DNA of 64,000 nt from Haliotis cracherodii (Eukaryota): assembly GCF_022045235.1 (NCBI RefSeq), contig NW_027266286.1:55676001-55740000 (forward strand), written 5' to 3'. Positions 15,031-56,024 of the stretch are shown piece by piece (position 1 is the stretch's first letter; each line of letters begins with the position of its first letter). The position numbers and the translations under genes are program-made. Below the pieces are notes generated by a model that did not search any database, was not told where the DNA came from, and was given only the letters and a program-made list of their open reading frames with translations.

Positions 15031-17500
15031 ATGAAAGGTCTGAGCAGCTGTCTGCCCATGTGTCTGTGTCTTGCTGTCTGTCTGCAGATCATCTGCGGGG
15101 AAGATACCCAGCAAGTTGACACACCTCTGTCCCGACAAAAGAGGTTTGACTTTGACTTTGACAAAATATTAAAGGGTTTGAAGACGGCAGGCACCTTCGT
15201 AAAGACGGCCACCAACCTTCTTGGCCAAGGGAATTCAACGTTTGGAAGATTTATTAATAGGCTCCCCTTCTTGGATCTGCCAGATGCCAAAAGCATTTTA
15301 GGCCGATTTGATGACATGATGAAGAAAGAGGCCATGACGCCAGTTCAGATGGACCTCGCCCACCAGTTGATGGACGCCCTTAATCATACAGTCTCGCTGA
15401 AGGAGCAATTCGAGGAAAGTAGCGGTACGTTATTAACGAGAACACTCACTTTCGTTAGAGCGGACAAATAGAACGTCTATAGGGACATTAAAATGCTGCT
15501 GGGGTGTGGTTCTGGTGTATGGGGGAAGTCATTATGCTGAAGTGGACTGATCGCTAGCCCAGTAGGTATAGCTTGTGCCGAAGTGTCCGGTTCGATTCGA
15601 TAGATACATGCCACTTCCAATGTGGTATTGCTGGCATATTGTTTAAGGCCATACTCACTCAAATACAACTTACGTGGGAGGACATATGATCGGCAACCAT
15701 ATCTCAGTTTAACAGCTTCTCGTCTCATGAATGACAACTAGTATTTATTTTTCTCGCACAATTTACTTTCAAGTACAGTTTAAAGTACATTGAATGCGAC
15801 TGTAAGTTTAAGATAAAATAATTGGTACTTGTCTGGTTTGACTTCATGCAAAACTATTTCTAAGTACAAAGCAATTATGATTTACACACCGAATCAGTAG
15901 TTGAAACCCGGATACTCTCAGAGCAACCGTCTCTGATAGTTGAAGTCTAAAAGGCAATAGGTTCAAGTGAGAAAGAAGCGGATGAGCGAACGCTAACCAC
16001 ATGGCCACATCCCCGACTGACACAAAGACGTTTATTGATGTCACAGGTGATCGCGGATGACCAAGTGCAAAGTTGCGCCCCTTAGATATATATGTAGGGA
16101 TGGTATGGTTATAGTCAGAAACGTAGCTGATATTGTATCCTTAAATTGCTCATGTCATCACCCACTAGGTCGACTCATCCTGTCACGAGTACTTACAAGC
16201 TTCCGTGATAGGTGAAAGGTTGCGGCGAAGGCGTGAACTCACTCAGTTGCTGTAAACCAGGAAGAATACCATTTGTATTGATGGGGCGGTGGGGTAGTCT
16301 AGTGGTTAAAGCGTTTGCTCGTCACGCCGAAGACCCGGGTTCGGTTCTCCACATGGGTACAAATTGTGAAGCCCATTTCTGGGCCCACTTGCACAAAGCG
16401 ATCCTAGCGCTAAGAAGGTCGTAACTCCCATACTTTAACATAGGCTTACGATAGTCTTAGCGCTAAGATCGCTTTGTGCAAGTGGGCCCTGGTGTCATCC
16501 GCCGTGATATTGCTGGAATATTGCTAAAAGCGGCGTAAAGCCACACTCACTCACTCACTTCTGTTGATTACAGAACATTGTTCTTGTACCTCAACATCCT
16601 TGTTCTAGACCATGTCGTATTATTCATTTTCCTGTTCTTGTAAATGCAACTGTTCTTGTTCAGCTCCTGCTCCTGTTCTATTTTGTTCTTGTTAATGTTC
16701 ATTATTGACCTCCTGATTCAAGAGCCTGTTTCCCCGCTGTCTTTCTTGTTTACTTTCACACTGTTCTTGGTCTCTTTCCTACTCTTGTTCCTGACCTTGA
16801 TCTTATTGTTCCTGATTCTGGTGTACCTCCTCTCGCTCTTTTCAAAGTCGTAGGCTACATGCTATTTGTATATATGTGTTTATCGTCTTCAGGTCAGAAA
16901 CAATTCGATTTGGTCAGTCTGGTGGCGGGACTAAGGACTGCCGGCACTGTGACAAAGACCATCACCAACGTCCTCGGCTTCAGAAACTCCGCTTTCGGAA
17001 GGTTCATCAACCAGGTGCCTTTCTTGGACGTACCTGATGCCAAGAACGTCCTTGAACATGTGGAGAACATGATGAAGACAGAAAAGATGTCAGAGGTCAA
17101 GATGGACCACGCCCATCAGCTGATGGAGGCTCTGCAATACTCCATCCAGATGAAGGAACAACTAGGAGAGGGCAGTGGTAAGTTCTCTTTCAACCAGGTG
17201 TAACTTAAATATTGTCCAAGAAGGAGTTAAACCCAACTCTCTCCGTCACTCAGGAGTAATTGATTGGCCTAAAGAGATTATCGAACTTTGTTGTCTATAG
17301 GAGCTTTTGGTTAGAAAGTAGACTTGCAGTCAGAGAGTTTAATTACGCAGCAAGCTTAAAATGAATATCTGCTGATGAGTTTACTATTTGTTTTAAATAA
17401 TTCGTGCATGGGTTTGTTTGTTACAGGTTCGTCAACATTGCTGCAGACATCGACCTTGATGATGTTGCCGGTCATGTGTGCAGTGAAATTTACCATATAA
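15031..17500 (+). CDS. Gene A: predicted GPI-anchored, furin-processed two-domain amphipathic-helix protein (250 aa)
   Basis: Acceptor tttcag ends 15020. Coding exons 15031-15424 (G|gtacgt), 16893-17177 (G|gtaagt), 17427-17500 (ttacag|...TAA); both introns phase 1; 753 nt total. Signal MKGLSSCLPMCLCLAVCLQIICG; pro EDTQQVDTPLSRQKR; domain 1 FDFDFDKILKGLKTAG...KEQFEESS; domain 2 GQKQFDLVSLVAGLRTAG...KEQLGEGS; tail GSSTLLQTSTLMMLPVMCAVKFTI*. AATAAA at 17676. Confidence 0.85.
16283..16559 (+). mobile_element. SINE family 1, interrupted by a MITE
   Basis: Head 16283-16381 and tail 16489-16559. Confidence 0.85.
16382..16488. mobile_element. 107-bp MITE, probably PIF/Harbinger type, nested in a SINE in a gene A intron
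   Basis: ~33-bp TIR GGCCCACTTGCACAAAGCGATCYTAGCGCTAAGA. CTG target duplication at 16379-16381 and 16489-16491 restores the SINE sequence catttCTGgtgtc. Confidence 0.8.
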
Positions 17501-17883
17501 ATGTGTGGACAAGCATGTTGCCAGGGACTAATTGCTCATGATCAAATTCTCTTTGAGTTGCGTCCCCTTATCAGTGCCAGGATCGGCTTGTCGATTCACG
17601 GAAGAGCTCCTATTATTACCCTCGGCACCATATTTTGTAGTAATCGTCTCGGTGTCCACGCTCTGATATAATTGAAATAAAACTATTTCTCAAACGTTGT
17701 ACTTGTTTAATTAACTATATCACAATTGCCACAGGGTGTGCTGGGGGCAGTGTCGACCCCTCACTGTGAGCGCTAGCCCAGTGCCTGGCCTCTGCGTGTG
17801 TACGCTCTCTACTAGTGAATGAGTAGGTGAGTGTTCTTTAACACCCTGGTCAGCAATAGTCCAACTGTACCTTTAAGTAACCA

Positions 17884-17923
<40 letters not shown>

Positions 17924-17929
17924 TGTTTT

Positions 17930-18139
17930 GTACCTTGGGTGCGCCAGAAATCTATGATCTTGGATTCGCCCAACTTGTTTCTAGGTTTGTCAGCACCACA
18001 CCCCTACTCGTGGGTTTTACCGAGGTGGTAAACGCCTGAAACCTGCACAAAGAACACCGGGTTTCCCCCCACATTAAGATGACACATTTAGCGGCGCTGT
18101 AAGGCTGTAAGTGACGTTTAACCTAACTCACTCACTCAC
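17930..18139 (+). mobile_element. SINE family 4 (partial, diverged)
   Basis: Matches the family-4 body and tail. Confidence 0.65.
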
Positions 18140-18155
18140 ACGTCGTCAACCAAAA

Positions 18156-18299
18156 NNNNNNNNNNNNNNNNNNNNNNNNNNNNNNNNNNNNNNNNNNNNN
18201 NNNNNNNNNNNNNNNNNNNNNNNNNNNNNNNNNNNNNNNNNNNNNNNNNNNNNNNNNNNNNNNNNNNNNNNNNNNNNNNNNNNNNNNNNNNNNNNNNNN
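18156..18299. other. Assembly gap
   Basis: Run of N. Confidence 1.
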
Positions 18300-18699: not shown

Positions 18700-20290
18700 T
18701 TCCCTTTATTCAGTGCTTGTAGGCCACGGGCCTTTTTGTACAGACGACATACAATTAAGGTGCAAACAAGTATAAGATATAATACCCTCCTTCCTTTTTT
18801 TAAGAAAAGCAGTTTTTACATAATTGCACATTATACATGTTGGAGTATTTCTGTTCTTACATTGGCATAAAATAAGTACTTTGCTGTATTCATATTGATA
18901 ATAGGGTCATGCGATGACAGTAGTGTATTAAACTTCAGAATATTTGGGAAGATGTAAAATTTAGATTTTATGTAACTTTGCCTAAGATGGCTATAAGCTG
19001 GACAAATTAACAAAAAGTGATATTCATTTTCGATATGGTTTAAGTTACAAACTTTACATTTTCTAAATTCACGAGGGGCGGTCGGGTAGCCTAGTGGTCA
19101 AAGCGTTCGCTCGTCACGCCGAAGACCCGGGTTCGATTCCCGACATGGGTACAATGTGTGAAGCCCATTTCTGGTGTCCCCCGCCGTGATATTGCTGGAA
19201 TATTGCTAAAAGCGGCGTAAAACCAAACTCACTCACTCACTCACTCTAAATTCACGAGGAATGTTATAATGTCGTCCACGTTCAATTTCTAAATTGTGAG
19301 AACTAAGCCGAAAACGAGTCAATGTTGTTCTGAATTTATTTTCTGTAATACTACTCAAATAGTTCTCACATAAAATGGATGTTTTAAACTGTGTATAATA
19401 AGCCATTTGGGGGCCTTCAGATAAATCACTATGCCAAACCTGAGAAAAGTTGTCTTTTAAACGTTGACGTAACATATTTAAAAATACGGTTTTATTACCA
19501 CATGCTTGAAAGAACCAGACATCACCAAATCCTAATCTAAAAATAACAAGTTTTAAGTTTCGTTACCCAATTTACTTGGCCTTGTTCATCGTACAAGCGC
19601 AACATATTGTAACAATTTTTGGGTAAGCGAGATTCCTGCATTTAAAAGAGACAGCCAATATTCGACACATTTCAATTCAGCAAGCCACCGGATAGGGTAT
19701 CTACCACACTCGCCTAACAACCCATTATTTGAAGTTGATAACTTTACATTTAAAAGACGCTTACAGGCATACAACTGAACTTTTTCTAGTGGTTCTTTGT
19801 CACTGAACCCTCAAATTTCAGCCCCGTATAAAAGTATTGGTGTTATCTTTGCATCAAATAATTTGAAGTAAAAGTGAGGCGAGTATGGTTTTAAGGAATG
19901 TATACTAATTAAAAGGATCATGAACACCTTTCTTGCCTGAATTGCAATATTACTTAAAGCTTTCGACCATAGTAATCTATTGCTAAAATACAAACCAAGA
20001 TAACTGTATCCAGTAAATACTTCAACCACATTTCCGTCATGATACCATTTTTCATAACGTGATAAACCTCCCCCATTTTTAAAAACAAGTATTTTTGTTT
20101 TCAATAAATTCACTGACATTTCCCATTTACAACAGTAATCATGCAAGATATTTAACTTCATTTGTAAATTGTTGACAGTATTGCCAAACACAATAAGATC
20201 CTCCGCAAATAGAAATAGGAAAATATGAATACATTCCGGATGTAACTGAACACCAAAACGACAATTTTGTTCCATTTCTATAATCAAGCA
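18700..20290 (-). mobile_element. 5'-truncated decayed LINE of the same RTE-X-like clade
   Basis: LFAEDL (degenerate FADD), KTKILVF, PILLYGAEI, LGECGRYP, RFRLSSHNLEIERGRH, ICPAY; 3' AATAAA near 18705. Interrupted by the SINE at 19075. Confidence 0.85.
19075..19245 (+). mobile_element. SINE family 1, inserted in a LINE
   Basis: Intact copy; TSD tctaaattcacgagg at 19062 and 19245. Confidence 0.9.
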
Positions 20291-20645
20291 AATGATGTGC
20301 CTCTAGGTTCGTGTTCATATGAGACAAACGTTATATTAATTGTTTTTCAAACAACAAGGATATGAAATAGTGGACGGGATACTGAGTGTAAGAGCAATGT
20401 GTCCGGAACTGTTAACTTCAATTGTCATCCTGTCCGGAACAGGCCGTCCCAGAGAATCGTGCACGTCATGCACATTCAAACTCTACCGCAGTTTCCCTAG
20501 TTTCACTCGTTCACGTAACTATCACATTACATGGCACACTCCGCGATATCAGTGGTCAATAATTACACGATTATCATCAACTTCAAAAGTCTACATACGA
20601 CCGTACACCGCCAAACGGACCACACACATCGCTTATTTTTATATA

Positions 20646-21826: not shown

Positions 21827-22315
21827 CTATGTTTGTCCAGGATTTATGTATCATATGGCGGTTATATTTCACGAAAAGGGGTCTAAAATGGATTTGACAT
21901 TTGAAGTTCCCGTGTCAAGGATCGAAAGTTGAAGATTTATTTAGTAACGCTTAGATCACTAAGTAGAACGGCAGAATGTGAAATATCAAAAGCCATTTAT
22001 TCTCCATTCGGGATTTCGTTTGTTTGTTCATTCTTTAAGGTTGATTGATGATTGAACTTAAACCACATCTTCATATCCTTTCCAATTATTAATCGGTATT
22101 CATTATTGATCCACGAAACTGAATTCAACAGTTCAAATATTCTTGTAGGGGAGACAGTTACTCGTTGACCAAATAATCGTTGAACTATATATAATAAAAT
22201 ATGTTGACCATGCTGTACTACATAAATGTACGTTTGTCCATTTGGAAATCGAATTCTAAAATCTAAAACTTTTTACACATTTGATTAAGTTCTACCTGTT
22301 TTTTACTGAGAACTT

Positions 22316-25300
22316 TAGGAAACCCAAAGACTGTAGCATTCATAGCACAGTCTAATGTGAAGATTAGGAAACTGAAGACTGTAGCACTCATAGCACAGCC
22401 TTATGCGAAGATTAGGCAACCCAAAGACTGTAGCATTCATAGCACAGTCTAATGTGAAGATTGGGAAACCCAAAGACTGTAGCATTCATAGCACAGTCTA
22501 ATGTGAAGATTAGGAAACTAAAGACTGTAGCACTCATAGCACAGTCTAATGTGAAGATTAGGAAACTAAAGACTGTAGCACTCATAGCACAGTTTAATGT
22601 GAAGATTAGGAAACTAAAGACTGTAGCACTCATAGCACAGTCTAATGTGAAGATTAGGAAACTAAAGACTGTAGCACTCATAGCACAGTCTAATGTGAAG
22701 ACAAGGGAACTAAAGACTGTAGCACTCATAGCACAGTCTAATGTGAAGATAAGGGAACTAAAGACTGTAGCACTCATAGCACAGTCTAATGTGAAGATTA
22801 GGAAACTGAAGACTGTAGCACTCATAGCACAGTCTAATGTGAAGATTAGGAAACTAAAGACTGTAGCACTCATAGCACAGTCTAATGTGAAGATTAGGAA
22901 ACTAAAGACTGTAGCACTCATAGCACAGTCTAATGTGAAGATTAGGAAACTAAAGACTGTAGCACTCATAGCACAGTTTAATGTGAAGATTAGGAAACTA
23001 AAGACTGTAGCACTCATAGCACAGTCTAATGTGAAGATTGGGAAACCCAAAGACTGTAGCATTCATAGCACAGTCTAATGTGAAGATTAGGAAACTAAAG
23101 ACTGTAGCACTCATAGCACAGTCTAATGTGAAGATTAGGAAACTAAAGACTGTAGCACTCATAGCACAGTTTAATGTGAAGATTAGGAAACTAAAGACTG
23201 TAGCACTCATAGCACAGTCTAATGTGAAGATTAGGAAACTAAAGACTGTAGCACTCATAGCACAGTCTAATGTGAAGACAAGGGAACTAAAGACTGTAGC
23301 ACTCATAGCACAGTCTAATGTGAAGATAAGGGAACTAAAGACTGTAGCACTCATAGCACAGTCTAATGTGAAGATTAGGAAACTGAAGACTGTAGCACTC
23401 ATAGCACAGTCTAATGTGAAGATTAGGAAACTAAAGACTGTAGCACTCATAGCACAGTCTAATGTGAAGATTAGGAAACTAAAGACTGTAGCACTCATAG
23501 CACAGTCTAATGTGAAGATTAGGAAACTAAAGACTGTAGCACTCATAGCACAGTTTAATGTGAAGATTAGGAAACTAAAGACTGTAGCACTCATAGCACA
23601 GTCTAATGTGAAGATTAGGAAACTAAAGACTGTAGCACTCATAGCACAGTCTAATGTGAAGACAAGGGAACTAAAGACTGTAGCACTCATAGCCCAGTCT
23701 AATGTGAAGATAAGGGAACTAAAGACTGTAGCACTCATAGCACAGTCTGATGTGAAGATTAGGAAACCCAAAGACTGTAGCACTCATAGCACAGTCTAAT
23801 GTGAAGATTAGGAAACTGAAGACTGTAGCACTCATAGCACAGTCTAATGTGAAGACAAGGGAACTAAAGACTGTAGCACTCATAGCACAGTCTAATGTGA
23901 AGATAAGGGAACTAAAGACTGTAGCACTCATAGCACAGTCTGATGTGAAGATAAGGGAACTAAAGACTGTAGCACTCATAGCACAGTCTAATGTGAAGAT
24001 AAGGGAACTAAAGACTGTAGCACTCATAGCACAGTCTGATGTGAAGATAAGGGAACTAAAGACTGTAGCACTCATAGCACAGTCTGATGTGAAGATTAGG
24101 AAACTGAAGACTGTAGCACTCATAGCACATTCTGATGTGAAGATTAGGAAACTAAAGACTGTAGCACTCATAGCACAGTCTAATGTGAAGATAAGGGAAC
24201 TAAAGACTGTAGCACTCATAGCACAGTCTAATGTGAAGACAAGGGAACTAAAGACTGTAGCACTCATAGCACAGTCTAATGTGAAGATAAGGGAACTAAA
24301 GACTGTAGCACTCATAGCACAGTCTGATGTGAAGATAAGGGAACTAAAGACTGTAGCACTCATAGCACAGTCTGATGTGAAGATTAGGAAACTGAAGACT
24401 GTAGCACTCATAGCACAGTCTAATGTGAAGATTAGGAAACTAAAGACTGTAGCACTCATAGCCCAGTCTAATGTGAAGATTAGGAAACTGAAGACTGTAG
24501 CACTCATAGCACAGTCGAATGTGAAGATAAGGGAACTAAAGACTGTAGCACTCATAGCACAGTCTAATGTGAAGATTAGGAAACTAAAGACTGTAGCACT
24601 CATAGCACAGTTTAATGTGAAGATTAGGAAACTGAAGACTGTAGCACTCATAGCACAGTTTAATGTGAAGATTAGGAAACTAAAGACTGTAGCACGTCAT
24701 AGCACAGTCTAATGTGAAGATTAGGAAACTAAAGACTGTAGCACTCATAGCACAGTCTAATGCGAAGATTAGGAAACTAAAGACTGTAGCACTCATAGCA
24801 CAGTTTAATGTGAAGATTAGGAAACTAAAGACTGTAGCACTCATAGCACAGTCTAATGCGAAGATTAGGAAACCCAAAGACTGTAGCATTCATAGCACAG
24901 TCTAATGCGAAGATTAGGAAACTGAAGACTGTAGCACTCATAGCACAGTCTAATGTGAAGATTAGGAAACTGAAGACTGTAGCACTCATAGCACAGTCTA
25001 ATGTGAAGATTAGGAAACTGAAGACTGTAGCACTCATAGCACAGTCTAATGTGAAGATTAGGAAACTGAAGACTGTAGCGCTCATAGCACAGTCTAATGT
25101 GAAGATTAGGAAACTGAAAACTGTAGCACTCATAGCACAGTCTAATGTGAAGATTAGGAAACTGAAGACTGTAGCACTCATAGCACAGTCTAATGTGAAG
25201 ATTAGGAAACTGAAGACTGTAGCACTCATAGCACAGTCTAATGTGAAGATAAGGGAACTAAAGACTGTAGCACTCATAGCACAGTCTAATGTGAAGATTA

Positions 25301-30083: not shown

Positions 30084-31608
30084 ATGAAAGGTCAGCTGGT
30101 ATGCCTTTATCTGGCAATATTTCTGCATGTCATCATAGCAGATTCCAGGCAATCTGCAGACAAAGCTCTGTCGCGACCGGAAGGATTTGACTTTCGTGCT
30201 CTACTCCGTGGGTTGAAGTCTGCCGGCTCTCTCGTTAAGGCTATCACCAACATACTAGGATTGAGGGAAACGGATTTTGGTACGTTCATCAACGGTTTAC
30301 CCTTCTTGGATCTTCCTGCCAGCCATCATGCGCTTGCCCACTTTGATGACTTGATGAAGAGAGACAGGAACATGACGGTGATTCAGAAGGCCCGTGTTGA
30401 GAAGCTGATGGCGAAGCTGCAATACAGCATGGAGATGAAGACAGAGCTCGGTACTTGCGATAACGGTAAGGCGCTGTTCTTCCTCCTCCATCTCACAATA
30501 AGTGATGTTCATTTAATGCACACACACACACACACACCCTGGTCATTCCCTTACCTACATAATAGCATATCCAGCAATGGAGTAGTGATATTGGATAAAC
30601 AAAAATTGAAATTGATATTATCTAGCCCTCAGCATGTTGTCTTAATCTTAAATAAAAGCGACAAAATCCTTTCCTCATTCATAAGAAATCTCTGCCAAAA
30701 GCCGATTCCGACTGTATTAAGACCATGTGTTTATAAATAACTACACTTCCCGTGAAGATCAGGGGCAAATAGGTCTTCAGCAACCCATGCTTGCCGTAAA
30801 AGGCGGCTATTCTTGTCGTAAGAGGCGACTAACGGGATCGGGTGGTCAGGCTCGCTGACTTGGTTGATGCATGTCATCGATCCCAATGCCTGGATCGATG
30901 CTCCTGTTGTCAATCACTTGATTGTCTGGTCCAGACTCGATTACTTACAGACCGCCGTCATAGAGCTGTAATATTGCTGAGTGCGGCGTTAAACAATAAA
31001 CAAACAAACAAATAACTAACTAAACAAATGGTGATGACAGATGTTCGGGAAAAGGTGAGCGTATCCTGCCCCACCGGTGGCAGCAACCACAAACCCAAAG
31101 ACTAAATGTAAATATCAAGCTCTCAAGAAAAGAGAGAAACATATTTGCAGTAATAGTGTACAATACTTTAAAATAACCTAGGCGCTATACATTTTATAAT
31201 GTGAAATCTCTACATGTTTAATGGGCAGGTGCCCTCTTTACGAAACAAACTGATACATTGAAATTACTAAACTTGATCCTGATCGAACCTTGATCGATGT
31301 GTCCGACCCTGAGATCCTAATATTTACATGATAAATAGAAATTAACTGTGCGTTTTTAATATCAAGCAATATTACTATAAAAGTCATAAAGGCTATATTA
31401 TCATATGAATTGTTATAGTTCCGTTTTTGTTATTTCCTGGAGTTCCGTGTCTAGGTGTATGGGAATAATGCTTAAAGCGGAGTAAAATCATCCCAAACAG
31501 CCACACTTACTGATAATGTTTTGTCATTGGGTTTCAGGGGCCACGGCGTCAACGCTGCCGATGACTAGTCTGATGTTGCCGGTCATCTATGCAGTGGTCT
31601 CCATCTAG
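30084..31608 (+). CDS. Gene B: single-domain paralog of A, predicted GPI-anchored (150 aa)
   Basis: Acceptor tttcag ends 30073. Exons 30084-30465 (G|gtaagg) and 31538-31608 (tttcag|...TAG), phase 1. MKGQLVCLYLAIFLHVIIA-DSRQSADKALSRPEG-FDFRALLRGLKSAG...KTELGTCDN-GATASTLPMTSLMLPVIYAVVSI*. Last exon is clearly homologous to A's (LMLPV). AATAAA at 31747. Confidence 0.85.
30749..31012 (+). mobile_element. SINE-like family 2, in gene B intron
   Basis: Full copy; flanking direct repeat aaataacta. Confidence 0.85.
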
Positions 31609-35864: not shown

Positions 35865-36080
35865 CGCCAGAAACCTATGATTGTGGGTTCAAATTCCCTG
35901 TTCGCCCCGATTATGCTTCTAGGTTTGTCAGCACCATACCCGTGCTCGTGGGTTTCACCGAAGTGGTAAACGTCTAAGACCTGCATCGCTTCTGGTTTTC
36001 CTCCCACATCAAGCTGACATGCTGTGATATAACTGGAATTCTGTTAAAAGCGGTGTTAAACCCAACTCACTCACTCACTC
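35865..36080 (+). mobile_element. SINE family 4 (5'-truncated), in gene C intron 1
   Basis: Body and tail match 42110-42316. Confidence 0.8.
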
Positions 36081-40493: not shown

Positions 40494-40504
40494 GGCAGGA
40501 AACA

Positions 40505-45767: not shown

Positions 45768-47133
45768 ATGCAGTCCTCCATCGCCCTCCTGTGCCTCGTT
45801 GTCCTGGTGTGCGTGCACTCCACCGTGACCGACACCCTGGACACTCAGGACACCCACCTGTCACGTCATAGAGGGGTGAGATCTGTGGGGGACATCGTAG
45901 ACGGACTGACCACCAAGTTCAATAAATATCTGTCATCTGTTTTCGACGTGGACGAGGACGACTTCAAGGACATCCTGAAGGCGCTGGGGAAACTGAAGTT
46001 GGCGGTACTGAAGGCACTCCTGAATAAATTCTTTGACTTGAAGGACAAGCACCACGATTTTGGAAGCGCAGACAATTTCCAGAGAGTTTCCCAGATGATG
46101 GAATCCTTGGAGGCAGACATTCAACAGCAGGAAGTAACCAGCGGTGTCACTCAGGCCACCAAACTGTCACGCCCTGTGGATGGCATCGTGGACGGACTGA
46201 CCACCAAGTTCAGTAAATATCTGTCATCTGTTTTCGACGTGGACGAGGACGACTTCAAGGACATCCTGAAGGCGCTGGGGAAACTGAAGTTGGCGGTACT
46301 GAAGGCACTCCTGAATAAATTCTTTGACTTGAAGGACAAACACCACGATTTTGGAAGTGCAGAAAATTTCCAGCGAGTGTCCCAGATGATGGAAAAGTTG
46401 GAGGCAGATATTCAACAGCAGGAGTCATCCAGCGGTGAGTATTTTGTAGTTCAGTCTAGAAGTATTACCGCTATTAATCGATTCCAAAAAATAGCGATTG
46501 GATAATACAGATACAAACATATTACGAAACCATTTCTATAATTGTTTGCATGTCAAAGTTGTTTGAGACAGCCTATTTCTATACCAGATGACATTAACGG
46601 ATGTTTGTAAGCAAATATGCATCAATATATCAAATTAATAAATAATCGTAGCAAGTAACCACTTATATTAGAAGCCTATAAGATTAACATGAGGTGTTTT
46701 ATGACATGAGTGAGTGAGTGAGTTAATGCTTTACGTCATCACATCGGCAATATTTCAGCCATATCGTGACGAGTTATGACATGAAGATGCATGGTAGAAA
46801 ATAAGCTTTAACTATGCATATTGGTAACAGTATTAACTTGTTCTTTTGTTTGGTTGTTGTGTTTCTTGGTTTGTTGTTGAACGCCGCAATATTCCAGCTG
46901 TATGACGGCGTCTGTAAATAATCGCGCCTGAACCAGACAATCCAGTGATTGACAAGATGAGCATCGATCCACGTCAATCATGGGTTGCTGTTGACCTGAT
47001 TCTTCAAGAGTACACTAATTTGGAATGATATGTGATGTGTTTTTGTCTTATTTCAGGGGCGCCTACACCTTACGTTACCATGACGTCATTGACAATTCCA
47101 CTGCTGCCAGTGATAGCTAAAGTTTTAAACTGA
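45768..47133 (+). CDS. Gene D: close duplicate of gene C (247 aa)
   Basis: Exons 45768-46434 (G|gtgagt) and 47057-47133. About 10 aa differences from C; last coding exon identical to C. AATAAA at 47174. Confidence 0.87.
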
Positions 47134-48368: not shown

Positions 48369-49289
48369 CCCCTCCAAACAAGGGTAGACAGAATGTCGAA
48401 GGGAGCATATCGTCAATGCGATATATTTGCCTCACCAAAATAAGAACTAAATCTTTATAATGCTTTAACAGAAATATTCAGTTTCCGACATAGAATTATA
48501 AACGTTCTTTGGTTATAATACGATACAGGTGCCATACATATAGGTGTTATGAATTTAGAACACGGTTATTGTGTGAGACACGAAATGGCAGACATCAGCC
48601 CCATTGTTGAGTAACAGAGCTACAAAGTTCATATACTGACAGGAAATCTAAAATATCCGTGTGCGACAAACCGTTTTGGTTATATAATTTCCTTATCTAT
48701 CAGGTGCAGGTATGTAATTAAATTGTCGAACTGACCTTTGTCATGTCGGTTTGACCATGTGCGTGGCCGCGTGACGTGACGTACCTTTTGACACACACTG
48801 ACCTGTGGAGATGAAGGTCAATCACTGTATTTCCTTTACTGCATTTACTGCCTCACTAACTCAAGGTTTGACTCTAATAAACATCAGTAGTATCAGGAAT
48901 ATAAAAATGCAATGTTCACAAACACAGCGTTCATATTCATTTCCCAAAACGCACCTCTGTGCTGCATTGAAAGGGTCCTGATAAAAAGCTCGATTTGTCC
49001 TAAACATCAATGCCAATCACAGCAACAGAAGAATATATATTACGTGAACTACAGATTATAACTGTTTAAAAGTATTACTGTTAAAAAGTATTTAAAGAAT
49101 AAAATAATGGAAACAATGAATATGCAATTTAAACTGCCGGGCAAACGAAGTATAGACGTTTAACGTGGATTTGACCAAAAAAAACTTACAAACGTTATCA
49201 AAACGTTCCTAGACTGAAAACAGTCTTCGAAACACTGCAAGTGGAAACGAGTAATGTTTCCTGGCAGTTTATATTGTTTAACATAGTTC

Positions 49290-51845
49290 CTCACACACAC
49301 GCATGCACAATTACTGTGTCATGTACACCTCCTTACACACGCGCATGCACAATTACTGTGACATGTACACCTTCTCACACACGCGCATGCACAATTACTG
49401 TGACATGTACACCTTCTCACACAAACGCATTCACAATTACTGTGACATGTACACCTCCTTACACACGCGCATGCACAATTACTGTGACATGTACACCTCC
49501 TTACACACGCGCATGCACAATTACTGTGTCATGTACACCTTCCTACATACACGCATGCACAATTACAGTGACATGTACACCTCCTAACATACACGCATGC
49601 ACAATTACTGTGACATGTACACCTCCTTACACACGCGCATGCACAATTACTGTGTCATGTACACCTTCCTAAATACACGCATGCACAATTACTGTGTCAT
49701 GTACACCTTCTCACACACACGCATGCACAATTACTGTGACACGTACACCTCCTTACACACGCGCATGCACAATTACTGTGACATGTACACCTCCTTACAC
49801 ACGCGCATGCACAATTACTGTGACATGTACACCTCCTTACACACACGCATGCACAATTACTGTGTCATGTACACCTTCCTACATACACGCATGCACAATT
49901 ACTGTGACATGTACACCTCCTTACATGCACGCATGCACAACTACTGTGACACGTACACCTCCTTACACACGCACATGCACAATTACTGTGACATGTACAC
50001 CTCCTTACACACGCGCATGCACAATTACTGTGACATGTACACCTCCTTACACACGCGCATGCACAATTACTGTGATATGTACACCTTCCTACATACCTGC
50101 ATGCACAATTACTGTGTCATGTACACCTTCCTACATACACGCATGCACAATTACTGTGTCATGTACACCTTCCTACATACACACATGCACAATTACTGTG
50201 ATATGTACACCTTCCTACATACCTGCATGCACAATTACTGTGTCATGTACACCTTCCTACATACACACATGCACAATTACTGTGTCATGTACACCTCCTT
50301 ACATACACACATGCACAATTACTGTGATATGTACACCTTCCTACATACACGCATGCACAATTACTGTGTCATGTACACCTTCCTACATACACACATGCAC
50401 AATTACTGTGATATGTACACCTTCCTACATACACGCATGCACAATAACTGTGTCATGTACACCTCCTTACATACCTGCATGCACAATTACTGTGTCATGT
50501 ACACCTTCTCACATACACGCATGCACAATTACTGTGACACGTACACCTCCTTACACACGCGCATGCACAATTACTGTGTCATGTACACCTTCCTACATAC
50601 ACGCATTCACAGTTACTGTGACATGTTCACCTCCTTACACACGCGCATGCACAATTACTGTGACATGTACACCTTCCTACATACACGCATTCACAGATCC
50701 TGTGACATGTACACCTCCTTACACACGCGCATGCACAATTACTGTGTCATGTACACCTTCCTACATACACGCATGCACAATTACTGTGACACGTACACCT
50801 CCTTACACACGCGCATGCACACTTACTGTGTCCTGTACACCTTCCTTCATACACGCATGCACAATTACTGTGACACGTACACCTCCTTACACACGCGCAT
50901 GCACAATTACTGTGTCATGTACACCTTCCTACATACACGCATTCACAGTTACTGTGACATGTACACCTCCTTACACACGCGCATGCACAATTACTGTGAC
51001 ATGTACACCTTCTTACATACACGCATTCACAGTTACTGTGACATGTACACCTCCTTACACACGCACATGCACACTTGCTGTGACATGTACACCTTCCTAG
51101 ACACGCGCATGCACAATTACTGTGACATGTACACCTCCTTACACACGCGCATGCACAATTACTGTGATATGTAAACCTCCTTACACACGCGCATGCACAC
51201 TTGCTGTGACATGTACACCTCCTTACACACGCACATGCACAATTACTGTGACATGTACACCTTCTCACACACACGCATGCACAATTACTGTGTCATGTAC
51301 ACCTTCTCACACACACGCATGCACAATTACTGTGACATTTACACCTCCTTACACACGCACATGCACAATTACTGTGACATGTACACCTCCTTACACACGC
51401 ACATGCACAATTACTGTGATATGTACACCTCCTTACACACGCGCATGCACAATAACTGTGACATGTACACCTCCTTACACACGCACATGCACAATTACTG
51501 TGACATGTACACCTCCTTACACACGCACATGCACAATTACTGTGACATGAACACCTCCTTACACACGCACATGCACAATTACTGTGACATGTACACCTTC
51601 CTACATACACACATACACAATAACTGTGATATGTACACCTCCTTAAATACACGCATTCACAATAACTGTGTCATGTACACCTTCCTACATACACGCATGC
51701 ACAATTACTGTGTCATGTACACCTTCCTACATACACGCATGCACAATTACTGTGTCAGGTACACCTTCCTACATACACGCATGCACAATTACTGTGTCAG
51801 GTACACCTTCCTACATACACGCATGCACACTTGCTGTGACATGTA
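49290..51845. repeat. 42-bp minisatellite (~60 units)
   Basis: Unit CACACGCGCATGCACAATTACTGTGACATGTACACCTCCTTA and variants. Confidence 0.95.
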
Positions 51846-52851
51846 CTATCATCACTACCTGTTGGTGATGACATTGTGATTAAATGTTGCGTTAAAATGC
51901 AACACCACAGTATTGTAGATATACACCTCAACGGCAATTACATCCAAACCATTAGTTGCCTGGTGAAGTATATATTCAAGAAATAAATGACGAGTGGTTC
52001 CTTCTCCAGGCAGTGTTTTGTTGAACGATAAACAACAGTCGTTTATTTTTTATAAGAAATAATGAGGGGGCGAAGCCTGTATGGTGATCAAATGTACAAA
52101 CTATATATTCAATTATTTACCCTAATTTTAATAATGATATCTCCCTGAATAGAATCCGACCTCTGAAATTCGGACAAGTTTATTTTACGAACAGGTGGGT
52201 TAAATTTGGTATTTCCTTATCATTCTCACAATCCTCACGTCGACTATCTGAATCTTTTCTTTAAAAAAACGATTGTCGGCCACTGCGTTTATTCAAATCT
52301 CCAGAGATGACGTCATGAAAGAATAATGTTTTATCTTGAAATAAACCACTTATATATGAACATAGCTATTACTAAACAATCACACTGTGTATAAGATCCA
52401 GCTGATATTGGCCGATTGCGGTCATTACCCTTGAACCATCTCATGACATCCTGTCCCCATTCTGGTCCTCCCACTATAGCCAGTTCACAAGTAGACTACC
52501 ACCAGCCACTTAGCGTTACAGATACTGAAGATATATTAAGGCAGTCCAGCATTCTATATGTAGCAATAACGCAGATAAAACGTATGAATATTTCGTATGT
52601 TGCGAAGTAGTTACATTAAACACATAATTAATAGTTACAATATGTAGTCATCGATAACAGTAGAGTTACTCGTTTCTGGATGTTAAGTTGGTGTAAAAAG
52701 TACTGCTAACAGTTTCAGTAGCAGAACCATTAGTGATTCTGGCGTCATGTGATTCTGACGTCATGTGATTCTGACGTCATGGTAAGCAATGACGTCTGCA
52801 ATGCATTGTGATGCAATTTCATTGCAGCGATATCTGCAATGTAGATATCGC

Positions 52852-52968: not shown

Positions 52969-53033
52969 TAAGCTGGGCCCCGCCTCTAATATCACAAGTT
53001 GACGTCGCGCATAGGGAGCCGGGAACCAGCTTA
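52969..53033. mobile_element. 65-bp mini DNA transposon, copy 2 (inverted relative to copy 1)
   Basis: Reverse complement of copy 1 with ~4 mismatches; 10-bp TSD CCAGTTTTGG at 52959 and 53034. Confidence 0.75.
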
Positions 53034-53380
53034 CCAGTTTTGGATGATAAATCCAGGCTCTTGACGTTATGGCGCTATGAGAGATATGATTTCATGCTTG
53101 TTGTGAGTAGTTCGTCAATGTAAGTCACAGTCATCACTGTTTCAGCCAGATCACGGTTAAAGAGTGGATGGTCATAGTCAATTCAGAGGAAGCCATGGAA
53201 GGAAGGCTCTCATCTCAGAGGCATATAGGAAATATCCAATTGTGGCCCATAACCTCAACGCCCTCCTCCGTTGAGAAAAGGGGCTGAGTAATCACAACTT
53301 GGCACCCTCCCCGACACAGCTGAGGAAGCAAGGGTGTCGCATCATCTCCCGACGGCAGGATGAAAGGTCACAGCTGACCA

Positions 53381-53473
53381 TATATAACGGATGTGGCGCT
53401 AGCGTCCCACAGCAGAAGCTCTACAGAAGCTGCACCGATCTAATCCATCCACAGCCATACACCACAGGGAAAG
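53381..53473 (+). promoter_or_regulatory. TATA box and non-coding exon 1 of gene E
   Basis: TATATAA at 53381, then agaagct motifs as in the C/D exon 1, donor GAAAG|gtatgt at 53473/53474. Confidence 0.65.
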
Positions 53474-54129
53474 GTATGTGACTTATATATAATAACTGTG
53501 AAGCATCGAAGAATGTTATAAATACAAAATGTAGGTGTCCGAAAATTGCACTAATCCAAGATGGCGACGGGCGCATGTAAGACCTTTTTTACACTTTTCT
53601 CCTGTTTGAAACTTTTAACAAGATGTTAAGACATTTTTTTTGTAATGTTTCATTTTAAAAAAAATAAAATATTGATATAAAATATTTACGCGCCACCCTC
53701 AGTTTAGCCAGCTAGGTTCACACAGTATGTTCACGCTTGCCAAGCTAATTAACTTTAAATATTCATTATGAAATATTGCCACTGACGGAATGTTACATTT
53801 ATATTTATTGTGTAAAACGTTAACGTCAGAGAACAGTGAGATTCGATTTTATCTGCCGAAACGGACGCCATTAGCCGTAAAAGGCAAATAGTTATGAAAA
53901 TTTTATGAACTTATCACTGAAAATTAGTGATGTCACTAGGTTTTCGCGAAAGGAAGCATGACAGAAAGCACAGCTACTCAAACAATTTACATAAGAATAA
54001 GAGACGTACTAATGAAAAAAATCACATTCAGTTTCTCTTTGAAATACTGAAAACACATTAATGTATATTCATGACATCCGTGATGAGGACAGATTGCCTC
54101 AAAATTATCTACAGTTAGGGTAAGTCTCT

Positions 54130-54309
54130 GAGTGAGTGAGTGAGTGAGTGAGTAAGTATGGTTTTACGCCGCTTTTAGCAATATTCCAGCAATATCACGG
54201 CGGGGGACACCAGAAATGGGCTTCACACATTGTACCCATTTCGGGAATCGAACCCGGGTCTTCGGCGTGACGAGCAAACGCTTTAACCACTAGACTACCC
54301 GACCGCCCC
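54130..54309 (-). mobile_element. SINE family 1, in gene E intron 1
   Basis: Intact copy; TSD ggtaagtctctga. Confidence 0.9.
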
Positions 54310-54646
54310 GGTAAGTCTCTGAAACATCACTAAGGTTATATGTTTGTTACGAATAAGAGAATATATTCTAATTTCAATTTAACTGTATTATTAATTGGGT
54401 TTTCTTTAGATTAGGTTATCAAGACATATGTAGTCTGTGTCTTGCAACTACTGTTTATTGGGGGCACGGGTGGCCCAGTCGTCAGAGGCCCCTTGTATCC
54501 TTTAGTCTTTCCATGGGGTCGAATCCCAGATTTGCTATGAGTATGGTCATTGGTTTGTCGGCACCATACTCGTACTCATCGGTTTCTCCAAAGTGTAAGA
54601 TGTCTGAGACCTGCATCACTCAGGGTTTCCTTTCACCCTAAAATGC

Positions 54647-54861
54647 ACCCATGAAGATCCATGCTTGCCATAAAAGGCGCCTATTCTTTTCGTAAAATGC
54701 GACTAACGGGATCGGGTGGTCAGGCTCGCCGACTTGGTTGATGCATGTCATCGTATCCGAATTGCGTAGATCGATGCTCATGATGTCAATCACTGGATTT
54801 TGTGGTCCAGGCTCGATTATTTACAGACCGCCGTCATATAGCTGGAATATTGCTGAGTGCA
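54647..54861 (+). mobile_element. SINE-like family 2, nested in a family-4 SINE (54460-54890)
   Basis: Family-4 head at 54460-54640; family-4 tail resumes near 54862. Confidence 0.75.
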
Positions 54862-55192
54862 CTTAAGATGACACGCCTTGATATAACTGAAGTCTGGTGA
54901 CTTGGTTAATTTGCGTGTCATCGTACCCAGGCGGCGTCTAACATTGCTCATAGTGTCAGCCACTGGTTTGTGCGGTCCAAACTTGCAAATCTACAGACCT
55001 AAAGATGCAGTTGGCATATTAATGATTGCGGGGTTAAACAACATTCACTCGGTCAGCGTACATATTCCGAAGGTGTACAGAAGCTCCAAGCACTAATAGT
55101 CTTGATGACAGATTTTGTTCGAAGTAACGGGGTCCAGATTACCGAGGTTACATGGGACAGATAAAAAAATCGAATCCTTCTTCTTCAGAAAC

Positions 55193-56024
55193 ATGCGGTC
55201 TTCCATTATCCTTCTGTGGCTCGTTGTACTGGTCTGTGTGAACACCCAGGACATCCAAGACAGCCAGGACACCCAAAACAGCAAACTGTCACGTTCTAGG
55301 CGGTCTGTGAAGGAGATTGTGGAGGGTCTGAAGACTGGATTTAGCAGACATCTGTCTTCCGTTTTCACTCTGGCAAAGGATAAGTTTAAGGAAGTCCTCT
55401 CCGCTCTGGGAAAACTTAAGCTAGCTGTAGCCAAAGGGATCCTGAAAAAGTTCATTGGCTTGAAAGACAAGCAGCATGATTTCGGAGATGCAGAAAGTGC
55501 CCAGAGAGTGGCCCAAATGATGGAGGTTCTGGAGGATGATATCGAACGACAGGAGAATGGTAAGAGTACTTCAGAAATAAACAAATTAATTTTCGTTCGT
55601 TCGTGCGTCCGTTTGTTCGTTCGCTCTTTATTCATTCATTCATTCATTCATTCATTCATTCATTCATATATTTATTTATCAACTTACTTATTTTGCTTGT
55701 AGACCACTGATTGATAAATCAGTTATTCGAAAGCCATTAAACATCAAACTTTCGGCTCAAGATCTTTTGACATTAATCAGTAGTAATGACATTAATCAAT
55801 GGCATGGATCAATTACACTAAGCAAGGCAAAATATACTGATATATATTACATCGTATAAACATGCGGTATCCCTGAAATATGATTACTTTGAAAAGACCC
55901 GCTACCATACATTGTGAAGTTATAATTGATGAATACATGTTCTGTTTCAGGAGCGTCAGCATCATACGTCACCGTGACGTCCTTGGCGATTCCTCTTCTA
56001 GCAATGGTGACGCTGAGGTTCTAA
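55193..56024 (+). CDS. Gene E: single-domain paralog of C/D, predicted GPI-anchored (146 aa)
   Basis: Acceptor cttcag ends 55188. Exons 55193-55559 (G|gtaaga) and 55951-56024 (tttcag|...TAA). MRSSIILLWLVVLVCVNT-QDIQDSQDTQNSKLSRSRR-SVKEIVEGLKTG...DIERQEN-GASASYVTVTSLAIPLLAMVTLRF*. Candidate AATAAA at 56500. Confidence 0.87.

What the first reader, a model, noticed from the sequence alone, without database searches (positions are those of the whole stretch)
15142..55559. The A/B and C/D/E proteins look unrelated but are two subfamilies of one ~90-aa domain
Hand alignment of A1 (FDKILKGLKTAGTFVKTATNLLGQGNSTFGRFINRLPFLDLPDAKSILGRFDDMMKKE...AHQLMDALNHTV) with E (VKEIVEGLKTGFSRHLSSVFTLAKDKFKEVLSALGKLKLAVAKGILKKFIGLKDKQ...VAQMMEVLEDDI) gives colinear anchors I..GLKT, F...(I/L)..L..L.L..AK.IL..F and Q(L/M)M(D/E).L. 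They also share the LSR before the cleavage site and the intron position and phase. The window therefore holds eight copies of one domain (A1, A2, B, C1, C2, D1, D2, E) with a conserved hydrophobic pattern and divergent surfaces, as expected of a fast-evolving helical bundle.
Basis: partly seen in the sequence, partly recalled or inferred. Interest (0 to 1): 0.75.

Follow-up and report, generated by a model that had tools for sequence, protein, structure and literature searches.

The report
Abalone-only family of tail-anchored helical proteins
Five neighbouring black-abalone genes carry eight copies of one roughly 90-residue helical module that looks like two unrelated protein types but is one family, found so far only in abalones and of unknown function.

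Summary
The window (Haliotis cracherodii, black abalone) carries five same-strand genes, A to E. They hold eight copies of a Cys-poor, all-helical module of 86-97 aa: A1, A2, B, C1, C2, D1, D2 and E. These are the only copies found in the genome.

A/B and C/D/E share about 25% identity. The similarity is colinear over about 80 columns and well above controls:
- hhalign gives 79.5% and E 1.5e-5. With orthologues added it gives 93% and E 3.4e-7.
- 0 of 500 column shuffles reach the real score.
- Each subfamily's HMM ranks the other subfamily first among 1,485 open frames.

The whole gene plan is shared as well: an acceptor just before the ATG, a signal peptide, a propeptide with LSR, a phase-1 intron in a Gly codon, and a short last exon encoding small residues followed by a hydrophobic tail. 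I read that tail as a GPI-anchor signal; this is inferred, not tested. Spliced RNA-like contigs confirm E's introns, and RefSeq proteins match B, C and D exon by exon.

The assembly gap lies 655 nt past A's stop codon and touches no exon.

"Fast-evolving" is not supported, since paralogue dN/dS is 0.12-0.34. The furin-type site is present in only 3 of 5 genes. The two 3D models could not be superposed. Relatives were found only in Haliotis, all labelled "uncharacterized".

The parts
15031..15424 (+). Gene A, first coding exon: signal peptide, propeptide ending LSRQKR, domain A1 (15145-15426, last codon split by the intron)
   Evidence: ORF and domain limits; donor AGCG|GTACGT; 103 of 131 residues identical to H. 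rubra P0004
16893..17177 (+). Gene A, second coding exon: domain A2 alone, phase 1 at both ends
   Evidence: acceptor cttcag|GT and donor G|GTAAGT; 72 of 94 residues identical to P0004
17427..17500 (+). Gene A, last exon: small residues plus hydrophobic tail and stop codon (GPI-signal-like)
   Evidence: read, translated; 19 of 23 residues identical to the C-terminus of P0004; CDS length 753, divisible by 3
18156..18299 (.). Assembly gap (N), intergenic, 655 nt past A's stop codon; not part of any family exon
30084..30465 (+). Gene B, first coding exon: signal peptide, LSRPEG (no dibasic site), domain B (30177-30467)
   Evidence: exact prefix of H. cracherodii protein P0005
31538..31608 (+). 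Gene B, last exon: hydrophobic tail with TSLMLPVI and stop codon
   Evidence: exact suffix of P0005
37410..38076 (+). Gene C, first coding exon: signal peptide, LSRHRR, domains C1 (37518-37787) and C2 (37815-38078) as a 291-nt internal tandem
   Evidence: exact prefix of P0008
38428..38504 (+). Gene C, last exon: hydrophobic tail with TSLTIPLL and stop codon
   Evidence: exact suffix of P0008
45768..46434 (+). Gene D, first coding exon: signal peptide, LSRHRG, domains D1 (45876-46145) and D2 (46173-46436)
   Evidence: exact prefix of P0011
47057..47133 (+). Gene D, last exon: hydrophobic tail, 100% identical in DNA to C's
   Evidence: exact suffix of P0011
53300..53473 (+). Gene E, non-coding 5' exon (its start was not determined; it reaches at least 53300)
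   Evidence: spliced contigs join 53471->55187 (GT..AG, cut +2) in 3 of 4 runs; it carries a stop codon in the frame that the H. rufescens model P0001 reads as an N-terminal extension
55189..55559 (+). Gene E, first coding exon (ATG at 55193): signal peptide, LSRSRR, domain E (55304-55561)
   Evidence: 119 of 122 residues identical to H. rufescens P0001
55951..56024 (+). Gene E, last coding exon: hydrophobic tail with TSLAIPLL and stop codon; the 3' UTR continues to at least 56300
   Evidence: spliced contigs join 55558->55950 (GT..AG, cut +1) in 4 of 4 runs

Best explanation
A tandem cluster of five genes in black abalone encodes one lineage-restricted protein family.

Each precursor has the following parts, in order:
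- a signal peptide;
- a short polar propeptide containing LSR, which in A, C and E is the start of a furin-type R-x-[KR]-R site;
- one or two copies of an ~90-residue, Cys-poor module predicted to be helix-loop-helix-loop-helix;
- after a phase-1 intron in a Gly codon, a 23-25-residue tail of small residues followed by a short hydrophobic stretch that ends the protein.

A/B and C/D/E are ancient paralogous subfamilies of that module. Both were already present before the sampled Haliotis species split.

Module number changes by two routes. In the A type a phase-1/phase-1 exon is duplicated (2 modules here, 3 in H. rubra). In the C type a 291-nt tandem duplicates inside the exon (1 module in H. 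asinina, 2 here, up to 3 in H. rufescens).

Most likely mode of action (inferred, not shown): the protein enters the secretory pathway, the tail is exchanged for a GPI anchor at one of the small residues around the conserved Gly, and the helical modules are displayed on the outer face of the cell membrane as binding modules. Their partner is unknown.
For: Homology of the two subfamilies:
- hhalign of A/B (3 sequences) against C/D/E (5 sequences) gives probability 79.5%, E 1.5e-5 and 80 colinear columns at 25% identity.
- With orthologues added (6 against 11 sequences) it rises to 93.0%, E 3.4e-7 and score 40.8.
- 0 of 400 and 0 of 100 column shuffles reach these scores (maxima 18.7 and 19.0). 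Reversed profiles score 10.4-13.0.
- The A/B HMM scores all 11 C/D/E domains at 10.7-21.6 bits, against a best of 7.5 in 500 shuffles. The C/D/E HMM scores the 6 A/B domains at 8.3-14.7 bits, and 4 of 6 exceed the best shuffle of 10.0.
- Among 1,485 open frames of the window, each HMM ranks the other subfamily's frames directly after its own. The A/B HMM gives E 1.4e-5, 3.2e-5 and 4.9e-3; the C/D/E HMM gives 4.9e-3, 0.069 and 0.42. Noise starts at E 5.3 and 5.8.

Shared gene plan:
- Six of six domain-exon donors are G|GT in a Gly codon.
- An acceptor lies 4-10 nt before each of the 5 ATGs. For E this is proven by RNA-like contigs.
- LSR is present in 5 of 5 propeptides.
- The tail-exon motif TSLx[ILM]P[LVI][LIVM] occurs 4 times in 127,996 six-frame residues. 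All four are in the tail exons of B, C, D and E. A has a one-residue variant.

Gene models:
- B, C and D match H. cracherodii proteins P0005, P0008 and P0011 exactly, exon by exon.
- E's two introns are spanned by spliced contigs in 4 of 4 and 3 of 4 runs.
- A matches the three-module H. rubra protein P0004.

Structure:
- The AF2 models are all-helical. A1 has pLDDT 68 and E has pLDDT 76.
- The loops fall at aligned positions: A1 residue 29 aligns with E 21-24, and A1 62-65 aligns with E 56-62.

Tail:
- Each tail is 23-25 residues long with at most one charged residue, which lies within the last 4 positions.
- The best 12-residue Kyte-Doolittle mean is 1.9-2.4, and nothing follows the hydrophobic stretch.

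Distribution:
- Only these 8 copies were found in the genome.
- All relatives found are Haliotis proteins.
Against: - The cross-subfamily signal is weak in absolute terms: about 25% identity and HMM bit scores of 8-22. In the whole-genome scan neither profile reported the other subfamily at E <= 1, and the A/B profile did not reach C/D/E proteins at E <= 0.001 among 1.84 billion representatives.
- The two AF2 models are of middling confidence and differ in helix count (5 against 3). They could not be superposed, and their fold-search hit lists barely overlap.
- GPI anchoring rests on inspection only. No trained predictor was run and there is no experiment. The hydrophobic stretches are short and contain proline.
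- The furin-type site is missing in B, in D and in two E-type orthologues.
- No tissue or stage of expression is known, so the 'surface binding module' function is a guess.
Confidence: 0.78

Rival explanations
1. The two module types are unrelated helical domains that look alike only because amphipathic helices share composition and periodicity. The genes resemble each other because unrelated domain exons were placed between the same signal and tail exons by exon shuffling.
For: Identity is only about 25%. Pairwise Smith-Waterman z-scores are modest at 2.9-5.5. Two of 6 A/B domains do not exceed the best shuffled control with the C/D/E HMM. The AF2 models differ in helix count. Phase-1/phase-1 exons are easy to shuffle.
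Against: Reversed profiles keep composition and periodicity, yet they score 10.4-13.0 against 32.6-40.8 for the real ones. The alignment is end to end, with loops and the terminal Gly in register. The signal grows when orthologues are added. In A, B, C, D and E the signal peptide, the propeptide and the first domain lie in one exon, so no separate 'domain exon' was available to be swapped.
Confidence: 0.07
2. The genes encode precursors of soluble secreted products, either helical proteins or amphipathic peptides of the antimicrobial or signalling type. These would be released by furin-like cleavage, and the hydrophobic tail would be a sorting or pro-segment, or would be removed, rather than a GPI signal.
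For: A, C and E have R-x-[KR]-R directly before the first module. The N-terminal stretch of the modules is amphipathic and Lys-rich. Some copies have internal KK or KR.
Against: Dibasic sites are absent in B, in D and in the E-type orthologues of H. rubra and H. asinina. Internal basic pairs are not conserved between copies. No basic site separates the modules. The tail exon is the most specifically conserved short motif of the family, and it has the layout of a GPI signal rather than of a spacer.
Confidence: 0.1
3. The tail is a true C-terminal membrane span, giving a type I protein without a cytoplasmic domain, and is not exchanged for GPI.
For: There is a hydrophobic C-terminus and one basic residue near the end in A, C, D and E.
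Against: The uninterrupted hydrophobic run is only about 12-15 residues and contains Pro. It is preceded by a run of small residues (G, A, S, N), as at omega sites, and nothing follows it. From general knowledge this pattern is typical of GPI signals and short for a span.
Confidence: 0.12

Closest known systems
Uncharacterized Haliotis proteins in RefSeq (H. cracherodii XP_071114338, XP_071114499, XP_071113904; H. rufescens LOC124125550, LOC124127171, LOC124127180; H. rubra LOC124259087, LOC124259104, LOC124259113; two H. asinina proteins)
   Same: These are the same genes or their orthologues. B, C and D are identical exon by exon. E is 119 of 122 residues identical to the H. rufescens protein. 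In H. rubra the A-, C- and E-type proteins come from contigs of one and the same length, 2,767,427 nt.
   Different: I found nothing in print under six LOC names and three protein accessions, and the link between the two subfamilies is not annotated. The H. rufescens E model has a 28-aa N-terminal extension read from the 5' UTR exon. That exon has a stop codon here.
Mite group 5/21 allergens (Der p 5, Der f 21) and spectrin-repeat-like three-helix bundles
   Same: They are small antiparallel three-helix units of about 100 residues. Der p 5 is the top Foldseek row for the E model (E 1.3, TM 0.55) and has VIA Z 7.0, rmsd 5.2 and 84 aligned residues. The utrophin spectrin repeat is rank 2 for A1 (E 0.4).
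   Different: None of these matches is significant (Foldseek E > 0.3; VIA Z is below the tool's own noise guide for helical proteins). There is no sequence similarity. They have no GPI-type tail and no shared gene structure. The resemblance is in shape only.
Abalone sperm lysin / sp18 (Pfam Egg_lysin; name and accession recalled, not from a call)
   Same: They are Haliotis-specific, secreted, helical-bundle proteins that arose by duplication.
   Different: No Pfam family reached its cut-off, and Egg_lysin is not among the weak rows listed at E <= 10 for any of the six exon products. Lysin is a larger soluble five-helix protein without a hydrophobic tail (recalled). Paralogue dN/dS here is 0.12-0.34, not above 1.
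GPI-anchored surface proteins in general
   Same: They share an N-terminal signal peptide together with a C-terminal run of small residues, a spacer and a short terminal hydrophobic stretch. The nearest language-model neighbour of B is a GPI-anchored apicomplexan surface antigen cluster, but its score of 0.82 is below the tool's noise level.
   Different: This is a mode of attachment, not a family. It was not tested with a predictor or an experiment.

Membership tests
One domain family uniting A/B and C/D/E | Significant, colinear profile-profile alignment over most of the domain | tested here: met
   hhalign gives 79.5% and E 1.5e-5, and 93.0% and E 3.4e-7 with orthologues. 0 of 500 column shuffles reach the real score, and reversed controls score 10.4-13.0.
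One domain family uniting A/B and C/D/E | Reciprocal HMM detection above background | tested here: met
   The other subfamily's frames rank directly after a subfamily's own among 1,485 open frames. 11 of 11 and 4 of 6 domains exceed the best of 500 shuffles. Not met at whole-genome or whole-database scale.
One domain family uniting A/B and C/D/E | Same intron position and phase at the domain end | tested here: met
   6 of 6 domain-exon donors are G|GT in a Gly codon. RNA-like contigs support E and RefSeq proteins support B, C and D. The C1 and D1 ends are read through inside the exon.
One domain family uniting A/B and C/D/E | Homologous flanking parts (signal/propeptide, tail exon) | tested here: met
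   LSR is present in 5 of 5 propeptides. The tail motif occurs 4 times in 127,996 residues, all in tail exons of both subfamilies. A's tail is a variant of it.
One domain family uniting A/B and C/D/E | Same three-dimensional fold | tested here: inconclusive
   Both models are all-helical with loops at aligned positions. pLDDT is only 68 and 76, the helix counts are 5 and 3, no superposition tool was available, and the fold-search lists are generic and barely overlap.
GPI-anchored proteins | N-terminal signal peptide | tested here: inconclusive
   All five products start M-[KRQ] followed by 12-18 hydrophobic residues. This was judged by eye; no predictor was available.
GPI-anchored proteins | C-terminal signal: small omega-region residues, a polar spacer, and a terminal hydrophobic stretch with nothing after it | tested here: met
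   The tails are 23-25 aa. G/A/S/N residues sit at the exon junction. The best 12-residue hydropathy is 1.9-2.4. At most one charge is present, within the last 4 residues. This was a rule-of-thumb inspection only.
GPI-anchored proteins | Lipid anchor shown biochemically (PI-PLC release, detergent partitioning) | not testable with these tools
Furin/proprotein-convertase-processed precursors | R-x-[KR]-R directly before the mature N-terminus, conserved in the family | tested here: not met
   The site is present in A (RQKR), C (RHRR) and E (RSRR). It is absent in B (RPEG) and D (RHRG), and absent in H. rubra P0002 and H. asinina P0003. It is therefore a feature of some members only.
Any Pfam family (including EF-hand and Egg_lysin) | Score at or above the family's gathering cut-off | tested here: not met
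   0 of 6 exon products reach any cut-off. The best row is PIN_8 at 21.5 bits against 26.1. EF-hand_8 scores 14.8 against 28.
Shell matrix protein 5 (Hdh-SMP5) of abalone | EF-hand protein with orthologues in bivalves, and the H. rufescens reference XP_046328359 | tested here: not met
   In the paper (sections 3.1-3.8 and passages read) the reference accession differs from the accessions of this family, and SMP5 has oyster, clam and scallop orthologues. Searches here found Haliotis proteins only. The sequences themselves were not compared, because they appear only in the paper's figures.

The most novel reading that the evidence does not exclude
The cluster is a genus-restricted invention: a new three-helix module displayed on the cell surface by a GPI anchor. 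Its copy number per protein (1, 2 or 3) changes between closely related abalone species by two different duplication routes. If the modules are displayed on gametes, larvae or epithelia, this variation could tune species-specific surface recognition, as lysin and VERL do for fertilisation in the same genus.
Probability: 0.15. Interest if true: 0.6.

Novelty: new variant of a known kind. Interest (0 to 1): 0.36.

Why it matters
The result links two sets of "uncharacterized" abalone proteins into one family. It also gives that family a complete gene plan and a testable cell-biological prediction, namely GPI anchoring.

The family is a compact example of how a lineage-restricted module diversifies. 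Two ancient subfamilies sit side by side, module number changes by exon duplication in one and by intra-exon tandem duplication in the other, and a processing site is gained or lost between copies.

Black abalone is an endangered species with a newly annotated genome, so naming orphan families helps later expression and population studies. Beyond that the finding is modest. No function is known, and nothing suggests an unusual mechanism.

Tried and rejected
Searches that found nothing useful:
- Pfam on the six exon products gave nothing at cut-off.
- PDB sequence search with both profiles gave nothing below E 0.14 for C/D/E and no row at all for A/B.
- Foldseek against the PDB gave no row at E <= 0.001 for either model.
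- VIA-align wide gave a best Z of 7.5 for E and 9.6 for A1. All rows were generic helical segments, below the tool's stated noise level for helical proteins.
- ESM Atlas gave first hits of 0.75 (suprabasin) and 0.82 (merozoite surface antigen 2c). Both are under the 0.9 level that shuffled proteins often reach.

Other items rejected:
- The representative search with the A/B profile returned 4 proteins at E <= 0.001. Two are Haliotis proteins. The other two, P0006 and P0007, are long bacterial repeat proteins that match only profile positions 13-52 through a TAGT..TVTVT-like repeat. I reject them as spurious.
- The search with the A1 exon alone found nothing (0 of 7 candidates). The reason is probably that the A-type proteins are longer than the tool's length window.
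- The own-genome search found no further copies and no cross-subfamily hit at E <= 1.
- The acidic DVDEDDFKD stretch of C/D is not an EF-hand. EF-hand_8 scores 14.8 bits against a cut-off of 28, and the stretch is not conserved in E or A/B.
- Hdh-SMP5 (PMC10741955) surfaced in a literature search because it is a 134-aa secreted helical acidic abalone protein. I read the abstract, results section 3 and selected passages. I rejected it because it has a different reference accession and has bivalve orthologues.
- Literature searches by locus names and accessions returned 0 papers. Three keyword searches returned nothing on this family in their listings.
- Nucleotide-level comparison of the five loci shows no A/B to C/D/E similarity outside dispersed repeats.

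Steps not done:
- Positive selection was not tested with codon site models, because no orthologous DNA was at hand. Only pairwise NG86 on paralogues was run. dS is saturated (above 1.3) for the older pairs and undefined for A1/A2.
- The joined spliced products of A and E were not built or searched. All searches were exon by exon or with database proteins.
- Supplementary files of papers were not consulted.

Full report
WHAT IS THERE

Stop-to-stop frames show six long + strand frames that carry the family. From these I cut eight domain copies:
- A1 15145-15426
- A2 16895-17179
- B 30177-30467
- C1 37518-37787
- C2 37815-38078
- D1 45876-46145
- D2 46173-46436
- E 55304-55561

The copies are 86-97 residues long. 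They have no Cys, except for one in B, and their pI ranges from 4.8 to 8.5. A profile search of the window's own 1.18-Gb assembly found only these three A/B-type and five C/D/E-type copies.

ORGANISM AND GENE MODELS

Database searches returned only Haliotis proteins, all labelled "uncharacterized".

- B, C and D: exon by exon, their window translations are an exact prefix and an exact suffix of the H. cracherodii proteins P0005 (150 aa), P0008 (247 aa) and P0011 (247 aa). One Gly is left for the split codon. The window is therefore black abalone, and my models equal the RefSeq models.
- E: 119 of 122 and 21 of 23 residues are identical to H. rufescens P0001.
- A: best matched by H. rubra P0004, a 347-aa protein with three A-type modules and the same tail.

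The coding exons are:
- A: 15031-15424, 16893-17177, 17427-17500
- B: 30084-30465, 31538-31608
- C: 37410-38076, 38428-38504
- D: 45768-46434, 47057-47133
- E: 55189-55559 (ATG at 55193), 55951-56024

For E, RNA-like contigs of four coded runs from four studies were laid on 53300-56300. All four skip 55560-55950 (GT..AG). Three of four also join a non-coding upstream exon, ending near 53473, to 55189. The runs' RNA status is the tool's guess, but the spliced form is direct evidence for the two introns.

I did not build or search the joined products of A and E. Everything was done exon by exon or with database proteins.

THE ASSEMBLY GAP

The only N run is 18156-18299. Gene A's stop codon is at 17498-17500 and an AATAAA follows at 17676. 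The gap is thus 655 nt past the stop and 11.8 kb before B's ATG.

Its left flank is a dispersed repeat that also occurs at 35914-36078. Its right flank runs into reverse-transcriptase-like frames on the minus strand.

The gap interrupts no family exon. Whether the flanks are continuous cannot be told, and I did not try to fill it. Since the gap length is only estimated, eight is formally a minimum.

ARE THE TWO SUBFAMILIES RELATED?

Within subfamilies the similarity is obvious: Smith-Waterman z 36-70 and 44-55% and 62-63% identity.

Between subfamilies:
- The 15 pairs have z 2.9-5.5. In 9 of 15 pairs none of 300 shuffles reached the score, and the worst pair had 5 of 300.
- Profile against profile (3 against 5 sequences) gives probability 79.5%, E 1.5e-5, score 32.6 and 80 aligned columns at 25% identity, running from the N-terminal I..GL[KT]T to the last helix.
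- Column-shuffled profiles score 10.6-11.3 on average, with SD about 2 and a maximum of 18.7 (0 of 400 reach 32.5). Reversed profiles, which keep composition and helical periodicity, score 12.4 and 10.4.
- Adding orthologous domains (6 against 11 sequences) raises the result to 93.0%, E 3.4e-7 and score 40.8. The shuffle maximum is then 19.0 of 100 and the reversed score is 13.0. A signal that grows with depth is what homology predicts.
- HMM against sequence: the A/B HMM scores all 11 C/D/E domains at 10.7-21.6 bits, against a best of 7.5 in 500 shuffles. The C/D/E HMM scores A/B domains at 8.3-14.7 bits, and 4 of 6 are above the best shuffle of 10.0.
- A blind scan of all 1,485 open frames of at least 25 aa in the window puts the other subfamily's frames directly behind each HMM's own family, with full-length alignments. 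The A/B HMM gives E 1.4e-5, 3.2e-5 and 4.9e-3; the C/D/E HMM gives 4.9e-3, 0.069 and 0.42. Everything else is at E 5.3 or worse.

Against this, the signal is too weak to survive genome-wide or database-wide search spaces.

THE GENE PLAN IS SHARED

- All five ATGs are preceded within 4-10 nt by a pyrimidine-rich ..ttcag acceptor. For E this is shown to be used.
- All five products begin with a signal-peptide-like stretch and a polar propeptide containing LSR.
- All six domain-exon ends are ..[AGC/AGT/AAC/AAT] G|GT, a phase-1 donor in a Gly codon.
- All five genes end with a short exon entered in phase 1. It completes that Gly and encodes small residues followed by a hydrophobic end.
- The motif T-S-L-x-[ILM]-P-[LVI]-[LIVM] occurs four times in 127,996 six-frame residues of the window. 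All four are in the tail exons of B, C, D and E, so in both subfamilies (the motif was defined after seeing the tails). A has TSTLMMLPVM.
- A's and B's tail exons also share 24 of 26 nucleotides.

Because the signal peptide, the propeptide and the first module lie in one exon in every gene, the resemblance cannot be explained by swapping an unrelated domain exon into a common frame.

Taking these lines together, I put homology of the two subfamilies at about 0.9.

STRUCTURE

AF2 with the shallow family alignments gives all-helical models.
- A1: pLDDT 68, helices at 5-12, 15-28, 30-38, 45-61 and 66-92.
- E: pLDDT 76, helices at 2-20, 25-55 and 63-85.

Mapped through the hhalign alignment, the two loops of E (21-24 and 56-62) coincide with A1 residue 29 and A1 62-65. 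The two extra breaks in A1 fall at the subfamily-specific AG insertion and at the proline-rich LPFLDLP segment. The order helix-loop-helix-loop-helix is therefore common to both.

I could not superpose the models. Foldseek and VIA-align against the PDB gave only generic helical matches (Der p 5, spectrin repeat, CsoR, dynein segments). None was significant, and the two lists barely overlap.

HISTORY

A tree of 17 domains separates the subfamilies by a long branch with 100/100 support. cra_A1 groups with rub_A1. E-type and C-type orthologues each come from four species. Both subfamilies therefore predate the split of the sampled abalones.

Module number varies:
- A type: 2 modules here, 3 in H. 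rubra.
- C type: 1 in H. asinina P0010, 2 in C, D, P0009 and P0012, and 3 in H. rufescens P0013.

In A the modules are separate phase-1/phase-1 exons. In C and D they form a 291-nt tandem of 1.9 copies at 94% identity inside one exon. The repeated unit includes a propeptide-like TQDTQL[PS]RP linker.

C and D are recent duplicates. Their tail exons are 100% identical, C1/D1 are 98.5% identical, and the block similarity extends 91% over 841 nt downstream.

SELECTION

Pairwise NG86 dN/dS is 0.21-0.34 among C/D modules, 0.12-0.17 for C/D against E, and 0.31-0.32 for A against B. dS is saturated for the old pairs and undefined for A1/A2. This indicates purifying selection, so "fast-evolving" is not supported by what could be computed. 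Restriction of detectable relatives to one genus is compatible with fast divergence, but it does not prove it.

PROCESSING AND ATTACHMENT (INFERRED)

The R of LSR is the P4 arginine of a furin-type R-x-[KR]-R in A (RQKR), C (RHRR) and E (RSRR). B (RPEG) and D (RHRG) lack it, as do the E-type proteins of H. rubra and H. asinina. No basic site separates the modules. Cleavage is therefore an optional trimming step, not a way of releasing peptides.

The tails are 23-25 residues long. Each starts with G/A/S/N-rich residues, continues with a polar spacer, and ends in a 12-15-residue hydrophobic stretch with at most one charge in the last four positions and nothing after it. From general knowledge this is the layout of a GPI-attachment signal. 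I rate GPI anchoring at about 0.6-0.65, a plain C-terminal span at about 0.12, and a soluble product at about 0.1.

FUNCTION

Nothing here shows a function. My working model is that one to three helical modules are tethered to the outer membrane leaflet and act as binding modules. It is an inference from architecture only. The tissue and stage of expression could not be learned from the coded runs.

COMPARISON WITH WHAT IS KNOWN

- The proteins exist in RefSeq only as "uncharacterized".
- No paper in the searchable library contains the six locus names or three accessions tried.
- No Pfam family reaches its cut-off.
- No solved structure is related by sequence.
- An abalone shell-matrix protein of similar size, Hdh-SMP5 (PMC10741955; abstract, results and passages read), was considered and set aside. 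It is an EF-hand protein with bivalve orthologues and a different H. rufescens accession.
- Lysin/sp18, the classic abalone helical-bundle proteins, do not match (their properties are recalled).

VERDICT

What is new is modest. An orphan, genus-restricted family is unified, given exact gene models and predicted to be GPI-anchored. Its interest depends on a function that is still unknown.

Noticed in passing
An open frame at 58819-59382 has a hydrophobic N-terminal stretch and a GRQKR basic site followed by a hydrophobic AAIFAAAVPIIGEFF stretch. Neither family HMM hits it at E <= 10, so it is not a ninth member.
   Followed up: partly
window 53391-53474: The H. rufescens model P0001 starts 28 residues upstream of the signal peptide. 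That extension is read from the 5' UTR exon, which carries a stop codon in this window (MWR*RP..). The extension is probably an annotation artefact, and the true start is the MRSS methionine.
   Followed up: partly
window 22315-26963: A large satellite: a 48-nt unit in about 97 copies at 96% identity, lying between genes A and B. It is open in several frames on both strands purely because of the repeat.
   Followed up: no
window 1531-3362, 4116-5852 and 49288-51846: Three further tandem arrays: 36/38-nt units in about 40-48 copies, a 34-nt unit in 51 copies, and a 42-nt unit in 61 copies. The last lies between genes D and E and has a strong GC skew.
   Followed up: no
window 6193-10314 and 18834-20302, minus strand: Broken reverse-transcriptase and endonuclease-like frames of non-LTR retrotransposons. 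The second lies just right of the assembly gap.
   Followed up: no
window 54108-54309 and 54613-54915: Dispersed repeats inside E's 5' intron attract enormous contig depth (10^5-10^6) and many false joints in all four runs. The second resembles 30785-30984 in B's intron at 90% over 202 nt. They look like highly expressed or very abundant SINE-like elements.
   Followed up: no
window 37788-37814 and 46146-46172: The linker between the two modules of C and D (VTQDTQLPRP / VTQATKLSRP) repeats the propeptide motif DTQDTHLSR. The internal duplication therefore copied part of the propeptide. The C and D linkers are only 78% identical in DNA, while the flanking modules are 93-98% identical.
   Followed up: partly
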